From NCBI RefSeq assembly GCF_036321535.1, contig NC_087448.1, positions 60,512,001-60,576,000 of the forward strand: 64,000 bases of DNA, given 5' to 3'. The position numbers and the translations under genes are program-made. The notes under the pieces were generated by a model, which saw nothing but the letters and a program-made list of their open reading frames with translations, did no database searches and was not told the origin of the DNA. Source of the DNA: Camelus dromedarius. Taxonomy: Eukaryota. Of the stretch, positions 5,190 to 60,810 are shown piece after piece; within the stretch, counting starts at the first letter, position 1, and each line of letters opens with the position of its first letter.

Positions 5190-6110
5190 TGTGATAAAAC
5201 ACACATAAAGTTTACCATTTTAACCATTTCTAAGTATACAGTTCAGCGAGTTGCAAATCAAATGCACAATTAAGTGCATTCACATTGCTGTGCTGCCATA
5301 CCTCTCCATCTCCAGGACTTTTTCATCTTCCCAAACTGTAACTCTGCACCCATTAAACAGAAATTCCCCACTCCCCTTCCTCCCAGTCCTGGTAATCTCT
5401 ATTCTGCTTTCTGTGTCTGAGTTTGCCTACTTTGTTTACCCCATGAAAGTAGAGTATACAAAGTTTGCTTTTTGTCTCTAGCTCNNNNNNNNNNNNNNNN
5501 NNNNNNNNNNNNNNNNNNNNNNNNNNNNNNNNNNNNNNNNNNNNNNNNNNNNNNNNNNNNNNNNNNNNNNNNNNNNNNNNNNNNNNNNNNNNNNNNNNNN
5601 NNNNNNNNNNNNNNNNNNNNNNNNNNNNNNNNCTGCCTTTTGGCTACAGTGAATCATGATGCTGTGAGCATTGGTCTACAAGTGTCTGAGCACCTCTTCT
5701 CAGTTCCTTTGTGTTCATACCTAGGAGTGCAATTACTGGGTCATATGGTAATTTGGCAGTTAATTTTTAAGGACCTGTCAAACTGCTGAGCCATTTTACA
5801 TTCCTACCAACAGTGCACAAAGGCTCTGATTTTTCCACGTCCTTGCCAGCACTTGTTGGTTTCTGTTTTGTTGATAACAGCNNNNNNNNNNNNNNNNNNN
5901 NNNNNNNNNNNNNNNNNNNNNNNNNNNNNNNNNNNNNNNNNNNNNNNNNNNNNNNNNNNNNNNNNNNNNNNNNNNNNNNNNNNNNNNNNNNNNNNNNNNN
6001 NNNNNNNNNNNNNNNNTGCCCAATTTAAATTGAGTTGTTTGGTTTTTTGTTGTTGAATTATTTATATATTCTGGATGTGAATCCCTTATCGGTTGTGTGA
6101 TTTCTTTGGA
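5190..6110 (-). mobile_element. Old L1 3' end (L1MB-like), interrupted by N gaps
   Basis: Typical reverse-complement L1 3'UTR phrases (aagtttaccattttaaccatttctaagtatacagttc; ccaggactttttcatcttcccaaactg; gtgcaattactgggtcatatggta). Confidence 0.8.
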
Positions 6111-9554: not shown

Positions 9555-10485
9555 TTGCAAACTACAAAGCTGCAGAAATCAAAATAGTGTGGTAGTTAGA
9601 GAGATCAATGTCATAGAATTGAAAGTTCGGAAACAAAACCAACCATCTGTGGACCTATGGCTGATTGATTTTTGACAAAGGTGTGAAGACCACTCTGGAG
9701 AAAGAATAATCTCTTCAACAAATGGTGCTGGGACAACTGGGTATCCACATGCAAAAGAGTGGAGTTGGACTCCTGTTTCACACTGTACACAATAATTGCC
9801 TGAAAATGATCCAAGACCTAACTAAAAGAGCTAAAACCATAAAACTCTTAGAAAAAGGCACAGGGGTAAAATATTCATGACTTTGAATTTGGCAGTGAAT
9901 TCCCAGACAGGACACCAAAAGCACAAGTAATAGAAGAAAAAGTAAATAATTTGGACTTCATCAAAATTAAAAACTTCTGTACATCAAAGGGCATTATCAT
10001 GAAGGTAAAAAGACAACATACAGAAGGGGAAATATTTGCAAATCATATATCTCAGTGTCTATCCAGAATATACAAAGAACTCTTTATATATTACAGTGCA
10101 ACACAAAAAGACTATCAANNNNNNNNNNNNNNNNNNNNNNNNNNNNNNNNNNNNNNNNNNNNNNNNNNNNNNNNNNNNNNNNNNNNNNNNNNNNNNNNNN
10201 NNNNNNNNNNNNNNNNNNNNNNNNNNNNNNNNNNNNNNNNNNNNNNNNNNNNCTTCACATCTACTAGGGGGATTGTAATGGACAGAGACCTGGAGAATAA
10301 CAAGTGTTGGTGAGGATGTGGAGAAATTGGAATGCATACATTTCTGCTGGGAATGTAGTTTTTCAGTTGCTGTGGAAAACATAAAATTATCATAGGACTC
10401 AGCAGTTCCACTCCTAGGTGTATACCCAACAGACCTGAAAACAGGAACTCCAACCAATATTCACAAATGTCCATAGCAACATTTT
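9555..10485 (+). mobile_element. L1 ORF2 C-terminal fragment
   Basis: ttcaacaaatggtgctgggacaactgggtatccacatgc; the frame DFIKIKNFCTSKGIIMKVKRQHTEGEIFANHISQCLSRIYKEL resembles ORF2p. Confidence 0.88.
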
Positions 10486-18499: not shown

Positions 18500-21400
18500 A
18501 AAAAAATTTTATTGTAGTGAAATACAAATACGTAAAATTTACTGTCTCATCCATTTTCAAGTGTGCAGTTTGGTGGTATTAAATACAGCCATAACCACCA
18601 TCCTTCTGCAGAACTCTTTTCATCTTACAAAACTAAAATTTTATACACACTAAACAACCTGCCATCCCTCCCCTGCCAACCCTTGGCAACAAGCATTCTA
18701 GTTTCTGTCTCTAAGGATTTAACTGCTCCACGTACCTCAAATAAGTGGAATCACACAGTATCTATCCTTTTATGTCTGGCTTACTTTGCATAATGTCTTC
18801 AAGGTTTATTCGTATTGTAGCATGTCTCAGAATTTCCTTCCATTTTAAGTCTGAGTAATACCCCGTTGTATGTATGCATCACTTTTGTTTATCTGTTCAT
18901 CTGTCAGTATGTATTTGGCTTGTTTCTACTTTTTGGCTATTGTAAATAATGCTACTATGAATATGGGTGTAGAAGTATCTGTCCGAGTCTCTGCTTTTAG
19001 ATTTTTTGACTATATACCCGGAATTGGAATTGCTGGATCATATGGTAATTCTACATTTAATTTTTTGAGAAACCATCATATTGTTGGCTCCAGCAGCTAT
19101 ATCAGTTTACATTCCCACCAATGGTACACAAGGCTTCCAATTTGTTTGCTAACATCTATTATCTTCTGAGCTTTGGGGTTTTTTGGGTTTTTTGGGGTTT
19201 TTTTGATAGTAGTAGCCATTCTGATGGTTGTGGGCGTATCTCATTGTAGTTATGATTTGCATTTCCCTAATGATCGGTGATGTTGAGCATCTTTTCATGT
19301 GCTTATTGGCCATTTGTATACCTTCTGTTAAGGTCCTTCAGACATTTTTTATTCAAGTTATTTGAATTTTTATGGTTGNNNNNNNNNNNNNNNNNNNNNN
19401 NNNNNNNNNNNNNNNNNNNNNNNNNNNNNNNNNNNNNNNNNNNNNNNNNNNNNNNNNNNNNNNNNNNNNNNNNNNNNNNNNNNNNNNNNNNNNNNNNNNN
19501 NNNNNNNNNNNNNNNCATGAAGTCCAGTCTGTGTATTTTTTCTTTTGTTGCCTGTACCTTCGGCGTCATGTCTAAGAAATCATTGCCAAATGCATTGCCA
19601 TGAAGCTTTTCCCCAATGTTTTCTTCTAAATTTTTATAATTGTAGGTCTATTTAAATCTTTGATCCATTTTGGGTTCATTTTTTATATGGTGTTAGTAAG
19701 AGTTCAACTTCATTCTTTTGCACATGGATATCCAATTTTCCCAGCATCATTTGTTGAAAAGATTGTCCTTTCCCCATTGAATGGCTTTGACACCCTTGTC
19801 AAAAGTCACTGGACTGTGTATGCAAGGGTTTATTTCTGGACTGTCTGTCCTATTCCACTGGTCTGTATGTCTGTCTTTCTGACATTACCACAGTTTTGAT
19901 TCCAGTAGCTTTGTAGTAAATTTGAAATCAGGAAATGTGAGTCTTCTGGCTTTGTTCTTCTCTTTCAAGATTGTTTTGGCTATTCAGGGTCCCTTAAGAT
20001 TCCATATGAGTTTTAAAATGAGTTTTTCTATTTCTGCAAAAAAGCTTTATTGGGATCACTTNNNNNNNNNNNNNNNNNNNNNNNNNNNNNNNNNNNNNNN
20101 NNNNNNNNNNNNNNNNNNNNNNNNNNNNNNNNNNNNNNNNNNNNNNNNNNNNNNNNNNNNNNNNNNNNNNNNNNNNNNNNNNNNNNNNNNNNNNNNNNNN
20201 NNNNNNNNNNNNNNNNNNNNNNNNNNNNNNNNNNNNNNNNNNNNNNNNNNNNNNNNNNTTCTTTTTCAGGTTGTTCATTTTTAGTGTATAGAAATGCAAC
20301 CGATTTTTGCGTGTTGATTTTGTATCCTTCTTCTTGGCTGAATTTAGTTGTTAGTTCTAACAGGTTTTGTGTGTGTGGAATCATTAGGGTTTTCTATATA
20401 CAAGATTGTATCATTTGTGAACAGAGATAATTTTACTTCTTCCTTTCCAATTTGGATGCCTTTTATTCTCTTTCTTGCCTCATTGTTTAAGATAGGATTT
20501 CCGGTATTATGTTGAAAAGAAGTGACGAAAGTGGGCATCCTTGCCTTGTCTCTCATCTTAGAGGAAAAGCTTTCAGTCTTTCAGCATTGAGTATGGTGTT
20601 TGCTGTGGGTTTTTCATATCATGGCTTTTTATGATGTTGAGATAATTTACTTCTATTCCTAGTTTACTCAGTGATTTTTCATGAAAAGATGTTGAATGTT
20701 TTCAANNNNNNNNNNNNNNNNNNNNNNNNNNNNNNNNNNNNNNNNNNNNNNNNNNNNNNNNNNNNNNNNNNNNNNNNNNNNNNNNNNNNNNNNNNNNNNN
20801 NNNNNNNNNNNNNNNNNNNNNNNNNNNNNNNNNNNNNNNNNNNNNNNNNNNNNAGTGTACTGCTGTTTATAATTGTTATTTTTTGCTGTATTAAGCCTTC
20901 ATTAGTATGTAATGTCCTTCTTTATCTGTTGCAATATTTTTTAATTTAAAGTTTGTTTTGTTTGATATTAGTATAGTCACCTCCTGCTCTCTTTTGATTT
21001 GCACTGGATATATTTTTCCACTCTTTCATTTTCAATCTACCGTGTCTTTGAATCTAAAGTCAGTCTCTTGTCAACAAAATATAGTTGAATCTAATGCTTT
21101 TATCTATTTGTCAATCTTTGAGGGTTTAATCCATCAATTACATAAGGTGATTAATGATAAGGAGGGGCTTCTTCTAGTTGGCTATTTGTTTTATATATGC
21201 CTGGTAGCTTTTTTGTCCCTCATTTCCTGAATTACTACCTTCTTTTGTGTTAAGTGAAATATTTAAATTTCTTTCTCATTTCGNNNNNNNNNNNNNNNNN
21301 NNNNNNNNNNNNNNNNNNNNNNNNNNNNNNNNNNNNNNNNNNNNNNNNNNNNNNNNNNNNNNNNNNNNNNNNNNNNNNNNNNNNNNNNNNNNNNNNNNNN

Positions 21401-23330
21401 NNNNNNNNNNNNNNNNNGCTTTGTTTCCATCCCTTTGGGTTGATGATGCCCCAAAAGTACATCTTTATACATTGTGGACCTCAAAACATCAATTAATAAT
21501 TATTTTAAATGCATGGAGTTACAAACCAAAATTACAATAGTATTAGCTTTTAGGCTAATAATTAAAACACATTATTCTCTTAAATCACATAGAAAACCAA
21601 AAGTGGAGTTGCAAACCTGTGTTACAGTAATATTAGCTTTCATGATTGCCCCTGTATTTACCCCTTACTGAGATCTTTATTTCTTCAGATGGCTTCCGGT
21701 TACTGTCTTGTGTCCTTTCATTTCACCCTGCAGGACTCCCTTGAGCGTTTCTTCCAGGGCAGGTCTAGTGGTAATGAACTCCCTCAGCTTTTGCTTATCT
21801 GAGAAAGTGTTGCTTTCTCCCATACTCTTTGGACAGTTTTGCCAGATAAAGGATTCTTGGTTGCCTTTTTTTTTTCTTATTTCGAGCACTTTGAGTTAGG
21901 CCAACTTTCTAATGGCCTTGGAAACTTTTCTGATGAGAAGTCTGATAATCTTATTGAGGATCCCTTACGTGTGATGCATTTCTTTTCTCTTGCTACCTTC
22001 AGGATTCTCTCTTTATCTTTGGCTTTTGAAAGTTTGATTGTAATGTGTCTTTGTGTGGGTCTCTTTGAGTTCTCTTTCTTGGAGTTTGTTGAACTTCTTA
22101 GCTGTTTATACTCATGTATTACATCACATTTGGGGAATTATCAAGCATTATTTCATCAAATATTCTCCTTCCCTTTCTCTCTCTCTTCTTTTTCTGGGAT
22201 TTCCACAACACATATATTAGTCTCTGTTCTCTTTCCTTTGATCTTTTTTTCTTTCTGTTCCTCTGCTTGGTAATTTCCACTGTCCTATATTCAAGTTCAC
22301 TGATACTTCTGCCAGCTCAACTCTGCCTTATTTCATTTACTGTACTTTTCAGCCTCAGAACGTTTTTGTTTCCTTTTAGATTTTGTCTTCTTATTGATAT
22401 TTCCATTTCCTTCCTACACAATCTCCTTGAATTTCCCTACATCTTCCTTTAGTTCTTTGAGCATCTTTAAGATGGTTGTTTTGACATCTTTGTCTAGTAG
22501 CACTGCCGTTAGGTTTTTTTCAGGCACGGTTCCTGTTGATTTCATTTGGGATAGCCATACTTTCTTGTGTTGCTTGTATGGCTATGATTGCTGTTATTGA
22601 AACCTGAACTTTTGAATCTAGTAATGTGGTTAACTCTGGAAATTTCCCTTTGCCAGAGTTTGCTGGGTTTTGTTATTATCTTTCTTTTGCTGTTTTTGGT
22701 TTTTTGATTATTGTAGGCTATGTCTGTGCCAAGGATCAGCCTGGGGTGTTAACTATAGGTCTTCTCTGGTCTCTTCTGAGCCTGCACCTTTGCCTAGGCA
22801 CGCAAGTCACTTTGTAATTTTCCCCGTATATGCAGTTGCTTTTTATGTCCTAATCATTAATGTCTGACTCTCAAAAGGAGAAAAAGAGAAAAATAAAAAG
22901 GAGGATGAGGTGGAGAAAGGGTGTCAACCTTTTAAATGCCCCACTTCAGCTGGAGGGGGAGGGCTTGCAACAGTTTAGGGGGGTGCAAATCAGTAGCTGC
23001 CGCCCAGTTTGCAGTTCTGTGATCAGAATCAGCAATCAGGACCAGAGCCCAGATCCGCAAAGTCTGGAGGACAGGGTCCTTTTTGCCTGCCTTGGCTCCC
23101 TGTGGAAGCTGTGCTGCTGCCAAGGGGTGTGGACTAGGCAACGGCTCCTTGTGCCAAGACCTGAAATTGACCCAAATTAGTCACAATTTACCATCCAAGC
23201 CTTCCCCTGAAGTTCCTAGCCTCCGTTTGACTCCAGAGTTCCACAGTAATCACATTAGACCGATTCTGCTAGTGTAGTAGTTGTCTAGAAGGGAAGGCAG
23301 ATTTCTGGTGCTTCATACTCTGCCATCTTC
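18500..23330 (-). mobile_element. Large old L1 (3'UTR, part of ORF2, ORF1, 5' region), antisense in SMAD9 intron 1
   Basis: Minus frames [25 protein letters not shown] and [36 protein letters not shown] (ORF2 RT region), and DKQKLREFITTRPALEETLKGVLQ (ORF1 C-terminus). L1MB-like 3'UTR at about 18500-19300. Contains four N gaps. Confidence 0.92.
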
Positions 23331-52932: not shown

Positions 52933-53043
52933 TCACACCGATGTTCCTGGAAACTGTTGTTGTCTTTGCTCCAAAACTTGCTGATTTAATAGTTGTTGCT
53001 GTTTCTGTAAAAATTGCACCACTTCTGGACTTCTCAGTAATGA
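52933..53043 (-). CDS. RFXAP: RFXAP last coding exon (Gln-rich C-terminal domain)
   Basis: Not in the ORF track. Acceptor tctttttcctttttaag, then SLLRSPEVVQFLQKQQQLLNQQVLEQRQQQFPGTSV* (111 nt). Confidence 0.97.
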   Translation of the reverse strand, partial: SLLRSPEVVQFLQKQQQLLNQQVLEQRQQQFPGTSV

Positions 53044-54599: not shown

Positions 54600-54731
54600 N
54601 NNNNNNNNNNNNNNNNNNNNNNNNNNNNNNNNNNNNNNNNNNNNNNNNNNNNNNNNNNNNNNNNNNNNNNNNNNNNNNNNNNNNNNNNNNNNNNNNNNNN
54701 NNNNNNNNNNNNNNNNNNNNNNNNNNNNNNN
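54600..54731. other. N gap covering most of RFXAP exon 2 (one of nine N runs)
   Basis: N runs at 5485-5632, 5882-6016, 10119-10252, 19379-19515, 20062-20258, 20706-20853, 21284-21417, 54600-54731 and 60646-60787. Confidence 0.95.
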
Positions 54732-57821: not shown

Positions 57822-58205
57822 AAGAGATTACCTTCTCCAAAGTACCAATTTCATCTAGGTTCCTAATTCTCTCTGCCTGCTCCTCCACTGATGAATCAGA
57901 TCAGTCATTTAGTATCTGTCCTTCCAGCCCATATCCCAGATCTTTGAAATGACAGCTTTGCTCACATGTCAATCATTTTCACTGAAATGTATTCATCTAT
58001 CACAAGGATGCAGCAGAACTCTTAAGACTTTTCACACATGTGTATAAACTTCAATTTAGGGCAAGCACTCACTAACTCTGAGCCACAAGTCCAGCCACTG
58101 CCACCTGACCCGTTTAGGAGCTGGTGGGCAGGCTCCGGGAATGCAGTCTGCTTAAGAGTGGGGTTTCCTCTTCCACCTCCCACTTCCCCAGACCCCAGAT
58201 GATAC

Positions 58206-58832
58206 CTCCAGTTTGACGTTTCCTGAGCTGCCAGCCGAGGCGGCCCCACCACAGTTCAGGGCCTGATCACTTTTCTTCTTCTTGTACTTGTCCTTGTACA
58301 TCTTGTTGCGGTGTTTTTTGCACATCCACGGCTTGCGCTGCTTGGCCACCTGGCTCGTGGTCTCGTTGCAGCCCTCATAGGTGCAGGTCTTGCTCATGCT
58401 GCCCCCGCCGCTGCCCCATCTCCGGGCTCCCCCGCTGCCGCCTTCGCCCCCCGAGTGAATTTCCTCGTCTTCCAGATCCTCCAAACTAGCCGTGCTCTCG
58501 CCTCCCCCCGGGGGGTCCGATGTGTCCAGCAGGTCGGCTTCGTCCTCGCCTGCCTCCTCCTCACCATCCCCTGCCACTTCACACAGGTACTGAATCGGCT
58601 TGCCCGCCCCGGCGCTGCCCCCTAGGGCCGAAGCCTGACTCAGGACGCCCTCGGCCGCAGCCTCGTCCTGCCCTCCACACGGGTGCATCACCAGCAGGGT
58701 GAACTGCGAGGCCGGGGCCGGGACGGGGGCTGGAGCCAGGGCCTGGCCGAGAGTAGAGGCGGGGGCCCCGGCGCGGAGCGCGCCGCCGGCGGCGCCCGGC
58801 CCCGCACCCTCGGCGACACCCTGCACCTCCGT
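58206..58832 (-). CDS. RFXAP: RFXAP exon 1 coding part (627 nt, 209 codons, starting at an ACG codon)
   Basis: Translates TEVQGVAEGAGPG...SQFTLLVMHPCGGQDE...DLLDTSDPPGGGES...MSKTCTYEGCNETTSQVAKQRKPWMCKKHRNKMYKDKYKKKKSDQALNCGG...NVKLE, with donor GAG|GTATCA. The start codon is uncertain (ACG at 58832-58830; first in-frame ATG at 58688-58686). Confidence 0.93.
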
Positions 58833-59170
58833 GCTGCCGAGACCCGGCGGGGGTCCACGACCCCTGCCTTTCAGCACCTGCCGGGCCCAACTGCACTTAG
58901 CAAACCAACGACCCCGGCCCGCTGAGAGGAAGGGGGACGGGCTCCACGATGGCACCCCCACTGCGCCTGCGCGGCTGTGGCCCGCGCGTGTGCGTCTCGA
59001 CGCTTTGTACCTTTCAGGGAACCCGGCGTCTCTGAGGGGCGGGGCTGAGCGTCCCCCGGGGCGGCTGACTGCGCATGTGCGATGGGCCCTGGCGGGAGAT
59101 GCTACGCTGCGCGGGCGCCGCCGCTGCCGGCGGCTGTGTGAAGTTGAGGTCTTGCCGCGCAGAACAGGAC
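58250..59170. promoter_or_regulatory. CpG island / RFXAP promoter with GC box and NRF1-like motifs
   Basis: Very GC- and CpG-rich relative to the flanks. GGGGCGGGGC at 59036-59045. NRF1-like TGCGCCTGCGC at 58962-58972 and TGCGCATGTGC at 59070-59080. No obvious TATA box. Confidence 0.85.
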
Positions 59171-59909
59171 GGTGGTTTTTGACTGGAATCTACTTTGTCT
59201 AAAACGTTCAAAGCACTTTGGTACTGGAACTCCAGAATGTAAATTCAGATTGTTCAAAAGCGTTCTTATGACTTGTGGCGCTCGTTATAATGGTATTTCG
59301 CCCTAAACTGCCTGAAATGGGAGATGTGAAGCTGGGAGGTGGCAGTGTCACCACTGGGCACCACTAGTTAGCAAAGAAGGCAGAGGCGGCCCGTTTGAAA
59401 ATGGTACAGTGGAGAAGGAGTGGACCGGACCGGGGGCCACGTCGTATTTGTGTTGAGAACTCCATGACTTAACGCTTGATACATTTTGCTCTCGTGGAAA
59501 CTTCTTTATTTTTATACCTTGGCATTTCCTATGACCTCTGAGGTAAGTTTTAAATAACGTTTTCATTAAACACGGTGAAAGTGTGTGAAAAAGAAGGTTG
59601 AATGACAAACGTTAAAAAAAAAAAGTCAATGAATAATCTATCACTTCTACCAGTTGTCTCACAATTGCTGGTTGCTGAATGTGGACTTAGCCAAATCTTG
59701 GGAGGGATTGGATCCTGTCATGTCCTGAATAAAACTGTCAGGTAGATGTGCACTTTCCTCTTACTTCTTCCCCCTCCCCTAGTCAGGTTTCACATTCCAC
59801 CTATTGGAAAGGAAAGCAGTGGTTATCCAATAAATGGTAAATCCATTCCCGTTAAGATATTTGCGTTTTGATGTGTGAGTGGGTCACCAGCTACATTTTA
59901 AAGAGAGAC

Positions 59910-60369: not shown

Positions 60370-60810
60370 TTTTTTTTCTTTTTAAGTTTTATTGGGGTAT
60401 AATTTACGTGACATAAAAACTACTCACTTGTACAACTTAATGATTTTTAGTAAATGTATAGAGTTGTGCAACCACCACCACCACAACGCAGTTTTAGAAC
60501 ATTTCCATCACCCTACCTAAGATCCTTCCTATCCAGTCTCCATCCTATTCCCAGCCCCAGGAAGCCACGAATCCACTTTCTGTCACTACAGATTTGCCTT
60601 TCATGGGCACTTCATAGAAATGTAAGCATATAATATGTGGCCTTTNNNNNNNNNNNNNNNNNNNNNNNNNNNNNNNNNNNNNNNNNNNNNNNNNNNNNNN
60701 NNNNNNNNNNNNNNNNNNNNNNNNNNNNNNNNNNNNNNNNNNNNNNNNNNNNNNNNNNNNNNNNNNNNNNNNNNNNNNNNNNNNNNNNTTTCTAGCAATG
60801 TTCCATAATG
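60370..60810 (-). mobile_element. L1MB-like 3' end
   Basis: ttttattggggtataatttac...atgatttttagtaaatgtatagagttgtgcaaccaccacc...gttttagaacatttccatcaccc; contains an N gap. Confidence 0.85.

What the first reader, a model, noticed from the sequence alone, without database searches (positions are those of the whole stretch)
58830..58832. RFXAP appears to start at ACG, not ATG
Seen: the minus strand reads GGC AGC ACG GAG GTG CAG GGT GTC GCC GAG (T-E-V-Q-G-V-A-E), with A at -3 and G at +4, a strong Kozak context. No in-frame ATG lies upstream within the open frame; the ORF-track start at 58961 is GTG. The first in-frame ATG is 48 codons downstream (58688, LLVMHPC). Recalled: human RFXAP begins MEAQGVAEG, so this codon is the orthologous initiator. 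ACG is a known near-cognate start codon. RFXAP is required for MHC class II transcription, and its C-terminal region assembles the RFX complex. Inference: this lineage or individual either initiates at ACG (possibly lowering RFXAP dose), makes a protein 48 aa shorter, or uses the in-frame GTG/CTG codons in the open leader. A base-call error in a GC-rich region is the trivial alternative.
Basis: partly seen in the sequence, partly recalled or inferred. Interest (0 to 1): 0.7.

Follow-up and report, generated by a model that had tools for sequence, protein, structure and literature searches.

The report
Camel RFXAP's conserved ACG start codon
The camel gene for the MHC class II regulator RFXAP has ACG where the human gene has its ATG start, but this is the normal, ancestral mammalian state (already curated as an ACG start in mouse), not a camel oddity or a sequencing error.

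Summary
On the minus strand, ACG lies at 58832-58830 with A at -3 and G at +4. There is no in-frame ATG upstream, and the first in-frame ATG is 48 codons downstream, at 58688.

It is not specific to camels or to one individual. All 8 mammals whose DNA I could read have ACG in the same context. Of 48 RFXAP protein clusters with enough upstream sequence, 47 read Thr at this site, and the opossum is one of them. Met appears only in catarrhine-like sequences and one vole gene model.

Protein-coding conservation begins exactly at the ACG:
- All 8 gap runs between the ACG and the downstream Met are multiples of 3, against 2 of 15 in the leader.
- pN/pS is 0.47 in frame, against about 1 in the leader.
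- Variability by codon position is 28/14/36, against 31/29/30 in the leader.

Mouse Rfxap (NM_133231) is already listed as a curated, experimentally supported ACG-initiated mRNA. The camel gene is therefore an orthologous instance of a known non-AUG start, and the primate ATG is the derived state.

Two by-products:
- The public camel model reaches an upstream ATG only through an implausible 40-nt "intron".
- The in-frame AUG at codon 49 is the first AUG downstream, so a shorter second isoform made by leaky scanning is likely.

The scan's earlier notes held no finding on RFXAP or its ACG start; they did record non-AUG (CUG) starts in two other camel genes.

The parts
58830..58832 (-). ACG codon at the position of the primate ATG; proposed main initiation codon of camel RFXAP
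   Evidence: ACG in 8 of 8 species. Thr in 47 of 48 cluster representatives; the mouse orthologue is curated as ACG-initiated.
58829..58835 (-). Kozak-type context A-G-C ACG G (A at -3, C at -1, G at +4)
   Evidence: -3 A, -1 C and +4 G are invariant in 8 species; conservation jumps at -1/+1 (0.88 and 0.98, against 0.46-0.60 upstream).
58206..58832 (-). RFXAP exon 1 coding part, 209 codons from the ACG to the GT donor at 58205-58204.
58689..58829 (-). Codons 2-48: N-terminal segment translated only if initiation is at or near the ACG; it shows a coding signature
   Evidence: 8 of 8 gap runs are multiples of 3; pN/pS 0.47 in frame against 0.80 and 2.04 out of frame; variability by codon phase 28/14/36.
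58686..58688 (-). ATG of Met49 (GTG ATG C context): first AUG downstream of the ACG, in frame; likely secondary start by leaky scanning
   Evidence: it is the first ATG in any frame after the ACG in 7 of 8 species. Several public models start here.
58833..58961 (-). GC-rich, ATG-free leader (5' UTR; the 5' limit is inferred, not observed)
   Evidence: pN/pS 0.9-1.04 in all frames and no codon periodicity; 13 of 15 gap runs are not multiples of 3; no ATG; the mouse 5' UTR is 96 nt.
58962..58972 (-). Conserved motif GCGCAGGCGCA, 117-158 nt upstream of the ACG in all 8 species; likely a core promoter element
59014..59076 (-). Upstream ATG inside the conserved motif CACATGCGCAGTCAG, followed by a 20-codon out-of-frame ORF ending in TGA. 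Probably promoter sequence; if transcribed, a uORF.
   Evidence: the ATG is absent in Miniopterus, Diceros, Choloepus and Microtus, and its frame varies.
59030..59069 (-). 40-nt GT..AG 'intron' that the public Camelus ferus model needs to join ATG 59076 to the RFXAP frame; judged an annotation artefact
   Evidence: joining 59076-59070 to 59029 onward reproduces the first 39 residues of P0001 (all that the joined test piece encodes).
52933..53043 (-). RFXAP last coding exon (SLLRSPEVVQFLQKQQQ...GTSV, stop TGA at 52935-52933)

Best explanation
Window 58832-58206 (minus strand) is exon 1 of camel RFXAP, and its long protein is initiated at the near-cognate codon ACG (58832-58830) in a strong Kozak context. 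Scanning ribosomes cross a GC-rich leader that has no ATG. A fraction of them start at the ACG with initiator Met-tRNA and make a protein of about 281 residues. The rest probably continue to the next AUG, the in-frame Met49 at 58688, and make a product 48 residues shorter that keeps the acidic, basic and C-terminal RFX-assembly regions. This arrangement is the ancestral therian state, already curated for mouse Rfxap. The ATG of catarrhine primates arose from it by a single C-to-T change at the CpG. Shown here: the codon, its context, its phylogenetic spread, and coding-type conservation that begins at it. Inferred: that ribosomes actually start there in camel, and the two-isoform outcome.
For: Spread of the codon:
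- ACG with invariant -3 A, -1 C and +4 G is present in camel, deer, mouse lemur, naked mole-rat, sloth, vole, bat and rhinoceros DNA.
- Thr is at the site in 54 of the 120 listed cluster representatives, while 61 show no motif because they start downstream. It is in 47 of the 48 that have upstream sequence.
- These include aardvark and golden mole and opossum.

Where coding begins:
- In an unguided DNA alignment, all 8 gap runs between the ACG and Met49 are multiples of 3, against 2 of 15 in the 156 nt upstream.
- pN/pS is 0.47 in frame, the same as just after Met49 (0.49). It is 0.80 and 2.04 in the other two frames and 0.9-1.04 in the leader.
- Variability by codon phase is 28/14/36, against 31/29/30 in the leader.

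No other start fits:
- In-frame stops lie 15-25 codons upstream in deer, mole-rat, lemur and rhino, with no ATG between them and the ACG.
- A 1-nt indel 3 nt upstream in mole-rat and a 4-nt indel in deer break any common upstream frame.

Precedent:
- Mouse RFXAP NM_133231 is listed with start codon ACG at position 97 among curated, experimentally supported non-AUG mRNAs, citing Peretti et al. 2001.
Against: There is no direct evidence of initiation in camel. The primary mouse paper could not be read, so the experimental basis rests on a secondary listing. Only 8 species gave DNA. pN/pS of 0.47 is moderate constraint, and the segment is low-complexity and GC-rich. No significant downstream hairpin was found that would favour a weak start (z from -1.65 to +1.09).
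Confidence: 0.85

Rival explanations
1. Translation starts only at the AUG of Met49 (58688). The ACG-to-Met49 stretch is untranslated leader conserved for other reasons, and primates gained an N-terminal extension when ATG arose.
For: Met49 is invariant and is the first AUG. Several public models start there. ACG is a weak initiator by general knowledge.
Against: The segment evolves like coding sequence: 8 of 8 gap runs are in frame, pN/pS is 0.47 only in the right frame, and second codon positions vary least. The leader just upstream shows none of this. Mouse is curated as ACG-initiated.
Confidence: 0.07
2. Camel initiates further upstream at an in-frame GTG/CTG (for example codons -15/-14, or GTG 58961) in the leader, which is open for 120 codons.
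For: The camel frame is open to 59192. GTG and CTG sit at codons -15 and -14 in camel, lemur and rhino.
Against: The leader has no coding signature. Indels there break the frame between species. Deer has an in-frame stop at -15. Residue conservation starts at -1/+1. Fox and pangolin models read the same DNA in another frame.
Confidence: 0.05
3. An upstream ATG is supplied by splicing, as in the public Camelus ferus model of 349 residues.
For: P0001 begins MRNAGFPERYKAS, and a GT..AG pair allows the join.
Against: The 'intron' is only 40 nt, too short for normal mammalian splicing by general knowledge. The ATG lies in a conserved promoter-like motif, is missing in 4 of 8 species and sits in varying frames. 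Models of other species use different devices to reach an ATG.
Confidence: 0.02
4. The ACG is a base-call error or a private variant, and camels really have ATG.
For: The region is 75% G+C, which is hard to sequence.
Against: The same codon is in 8 of 8 independent assemblies and in the Camelus ferus protein cluster. 14 DNA runs from at least 9 samples under two organism labels hold all sampled words of 58600-59200.
Confidence: 0.01

Closest known systems
Mouse Rfxap mRNA NM_133231, curated ACG initiation codon (Peretti et al. 2001, as listed in PMC2396638)
   Same: It is the orthologous gene with the same codon at the same position. The related vole has the same ACG and context in its DNA, and muroid ORFs read Thr there.
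   Different: The camel N-terminal segment is longer: 48 codons to the internal Met, against 27 in vole. No experiment exists for camel. The public camel annotation does not use the ACG.
Catarrhine (human-type) RFXAP starting MEAQGVAEG at an ATG
   Same: The protein is orthologous and the N-terminal peptide aligns residue for residue from position 1.
   Different: Catarrhines have a cognate AUG, so initiation is presumably efficient and leaks little to the internal Met. The comparison here indicates this is the derived state.
Other mammalian mRNAs with conserved near-cognate starts and leaky scanning to an in-frame AUG (the class compiled in PMC2396638)
   Same: A near-cognate codon in good Kozak context, an AUG-free leader, an in-frame AUG downstream, and coding conservation upstream of the first AUG.
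   Different: In RFXAP the near-cognate codon is the principal annotated start in mouse, not an optional extension, and one clade has converted it to AUG.

Membership tests
RFXAP (RFX complex subunit) | RFXA_RFXANK_bdg domain (Pfam PF15289) | tested here: met
   E 1.1e-26, 93.8 bits against a cut-off of 26.1. Only the first 50 of 122 profile positions lie in exon 1.
RFXAP (RFX complex subunit) | Best matches are RFXAP orthologues along the whole of exon 1 | tested here: met
   near-identical (rounded to 100%; one residue differs) to Camelus ferus RFXAP and 80-91% identical to other mammals.
RFXAP (RFX complex subunit) | Complete three-exon coding structure including the C-terminal Gln-rich part | tested here: inconclusive
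   Exon 1 and the last exon were found.
Non-AUG (ACG) initiated mRNA, as curated for mouse Rfxap | Near-cognate codon orthologous to the known start, in a strong context (purine at -3, G at +4) | tested here: met
Non-AUG (ACG) initiated mRNA, as curated for mouse Rfxap | No AUG in the leader and no in-frame AUG upstream | tested here: met
   the nearest upstream ATG is 197-259 nt away in the 6 species that have one and none lies within 300 nt in the other 2; it is never consistently in frame. One search shows in-frame stops upstream.
Non-AUG (ACG) initiated mRNA, as curated for mouse Rfxap | Coding-type evolution begins at the candidate codon | tested here: met
Non-AUG (ACG) initiated mRNA, as curated for mouse Rfxap | The codon lies within the mature transcript | tested here: inconclusive
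Non-AUG (ACG) initiated mRNA, as curated for mouse Rfxap | Direct evidence of initiation (initiation-site profiling, N-terminal peptide, mutagenesis) | not testable with these tools
   No such data were reachable, and the primary mouse paper is not held.

The most novel reading that the evidence does not exclude
The weak ACG start is not merely tolerated. It has been kept by selection for roughly the whole of therian history, although one CpG transition would make a perfect AUG. On this reading it sets a low RFXAP dose or a fixed ratio of long (ACG) to short (Met49) isoforms. Catarrhine primates then changed the translational control of this MHC class II regulator when they fixed ATG.
Probability: 0.3. 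Interest if true: 0.5.

Novelty: already known. Interest (0 to 1): 0.27.

Why it matters
RFXAP is essential for MHC class II transcription. Knowing its true start matters for gene models, antibody and construct design, and variant interpretation in non-primate mammals. The practical result is a curation point. Public models for camel and many other mammals are truncated at Met49, left 5'-incomplete, or extended to spurious upstream ATGs by artificial introns, because the pipelines do not accept the ACG start that is curated for mouse. The evolutionary point is modest but testable: ACG is ancestral in therians, AUG is derived in catarrhines, and a second isoform from Met49 is likely.

Tried and rejected
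Later searches used 58374 and up, other species' proteins, or horse residues 1-145.
Direct read-level confirmation and mapping of the 5' end were therefore not possible.
- Peretti et al. 2001 is not held.
- Literature searches for RFXAP with 'near-cognate' or 'translation initiation' added nothing beyond PMC2396638.
- Five of 12 contig look-ups returned no DNA: elephant shrew, tenrec, koala, sugar glider and aardvark. Marsupial and afrotherian evidence is therefore at protein level only.
- A hairpin downstream of the ACG that might aid a weak start was tested and is no better than shuffled sequence.
- The Rfam scan of 58400-59600 found nothing near threshold. The bacterial promoter/terminator scan is irrelevant and empty.
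- The representative search with the horse N-terminus found only mammal-like proteins, so the state in non-mammals stays unknown.

Full report
**Observation.** The minus strand reads GGC AGC ACG GAG GTG CAG GGT GTC GCC GAG, with the ACG at 58832-58830, A at -3 and G at +4.
- The mechanical ORF starts at GTG 58961.
- The frame is open upstream to a stop at 59192-59190 and contains no Met.
- The only ATG within 300 nt upstream, at 59076, is out of frame.
- The first in-frame ATG is at 58688, 48 codons downstream.
- Exon 1 runs to a GT donor at 58205 and gives 209 codons from the ACG.
- It carries the start of the RFXAP Pfam domain. Its best matches are mammalian RFXAP, with Camelus ferus first.
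- The last coding exon is at 53043-52933. The middle exon was not found and may lie in the N run 54600-54731, which I left alone.

**Not a camel peculiarity.** Orthologous proteins show Thr, in the motif S-T-E-V-Q-G, at the position of the primate Met.
- The species include cetaceans, rhinoceros, horse, cattle, lion, fox, meerkat, bats, lemurs, hare, squirrel, beaver, pocket mouse, chinchilla, shrew, desman, pangolin, aardvark and golden mole.
- Among the 120 listed cluster representatives, 54 read Thr and 61 show no motif because they start downstream.
- Met appears only in catarrhine-like sequences, one of them a His-tagged construct, in one Microtus oregoni model and in one low-quality paralogue-like entry.
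- Muroid ORFs read Thr.
- A search with the horse N-terminus recovered an opossum protein that also reads S-S-T-E-A-Q-G. The state is therefore ancestral for therians.

**DNA evidence.** Seven orthologous loci could be fetched: deer, mouse lemur, naked mole-rat, sloth, prairie vole, bat and rhinoceros.
- All seven, like the window, have ACG, with A at -3, C at -1 and G at +4.
- In five of the seven the public model starts at the internal Met, so those five were not chosen for an open upstream frame.

**Where coding begins.**
- *Gap runs.* In a MAFFT alignment made without protein guidance, all 8 distinct gap runs between the ACG and the internal Met are multiples of 3. Only 2 of 15 are in the 156 nt upstream.
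- *pN/pS.* Pooled pairwise pN/pS is 0.47 in the RFXAP frame, equal to the 0.49 found just after the internal Met. It is 0.80 and 2.04 in the other two frames and 0.9-1.04 in all frames of the leader.
- *Codon phase.* Variability by codon position is 28/14/36 in the segment and 31/29/30 in the leader.
- *Residue conservation.* Across 48 protein clusters, agreement with the consensus is 0.46-0.60 at positions -9 to -2, 0.88 at -1, 0.98 at +1 and 1.00 at +2.
- *Upstream frame.* In-frame stops lie 15-25 codons upstream in four species, with no ATG between them and the ACG. A 1-nt indel 3 nt upstream in mole-rat and a 4-nt indel in deer break any shared upstream frame.
- Translation must therefore begin at or immediately next to the ACG.

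**What is already known.** A 2008 compilation of curated, experimentally supported non-AUG mRNAs lists mouse RFXAP NM_133231 with start codon ACG at position 97, citing Peretti et al. 2001. I could not read the primary paper. The camel codon is thus an orthologue of a known ACG start.
- its spread across therians;
- the conclusion that the catarrhine ATG is derived, by one C-to-T change at the CpG;
- the state of public annotation.

**Annotation artefacts.**
- The Camelus ferus model of 349 residues begins MRNAGFPERYKAS. Joining 59076-59070 to 59029 onward across a 40-nt GT..AG gap reproduces its first 39 residues.
- That ATG lies in a conserved motif, CACATGCGCAGTCAG. The motif lacks the ATG in four of the eight species and sits upstream of a GC box and of a second conserved motif, GCGCAGGCGCA. 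It looks like promoter sequence.
- Other species' models are 5'-incomplete (starting with T), start at the internal Met, or shift frame to reach other ATGs.

**Mechanism.** No ATG occurs between the ACG and the internal Met in 7 of 8 species, and that Met is in frame. Ribosomes that pass the weak ACG should therefore start at Met49 and make a product 48 residues shorter. This two-isoform outcome is an inference. No downstream hairpin better than shuffled sequence was found, and no Rfam family matched.

**Limits.**
- 14 DNA runs from at least 9 samples, 6 studies and two organism labels hold every sampled word of 58600-59200. Six RNA runs hold 52-75% of them.
- The camel transcript's 5' end is therefore inferred from the 96-nt mouse leader and the conserved motifs.

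**Verdict.** The feature is real and correctly observed. It is explained as a conserved, already known ACG start of RFXAP. It is ordinary for the gene, of modest interest, and useful mainly for curation.

Noticed in passing
window 59030-59076 (-): The public Camelus ferus RFXAP model (349 aa) can be reproduced only by joining ATG 59076-59070 to 59029 onward across a 40-nt GT..AG gap. This looks like a gene-prediction device to obtain an ATG start.
   Followed up: yes
window 59065-59079 and 58962-58972 (-): Two conserved GC-rich motifs, CACATGCGCAGTCAG and GCGCAGGCGCA, flank a CCCCGCCCC box. All are shared by up to 8 mammals upstream of the RFXAP leader and are probably core promoter elements (they look NRF1-like and Sp1-like, from memory).
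   Followed up: partly
window 54600-54731: The middle coding exon of RFXAP (about 36 codons) was not found anywhere in the window by exact peptide words. A 132-base N run lies between exon 1 and the last exon and may cover it.
   Followed up: no
window 5485-5632, 5882-6016, 10119-10252, 19379-19515, 20062-20258, 20706-20853, 21284-21417, 60646-60788: There are eight further N runs of about 130-200 bases, similar in size to the one inside RFXAP. They are masked stretches or gaps.
   Followed up: no
proteins P0073, P0083, P0064, P0126 (cetaceans): Gray whale, narwhal and pilot whale each carry a second, degraded RFXAP-like sequence. One reads the leader in a shifted frame and one is a chimera. 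They may be processed retrocopies, which would also record the extent of the mRNA leader.
   Followed up: no
protein P0033 (Logan contig): A catarrhine-type RFXAP is fused to a His-tag/enterokinase leader, so a recombinant expression construct is present in a public sequencing run.
   Followed up: no
protein P0102 (Microtus oregoni XP_041514796): This vole model shows Met at the start site, whereas Microtus ochrogaster DNA (L005) has ACG. It is either a real second ACG-to-ATG change or an annotated non-AUG start. Its DNA was not seen.
   Followed up: partly
window about 58220-58245 (-): There is one residue difference between the window (GGAASAGSS) and the Camelus ferus RefSeq-type protein (GGASSAGSS). 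An older C. ferus model matches the window. This is a species or individual polymorphism.
   Followed up: no
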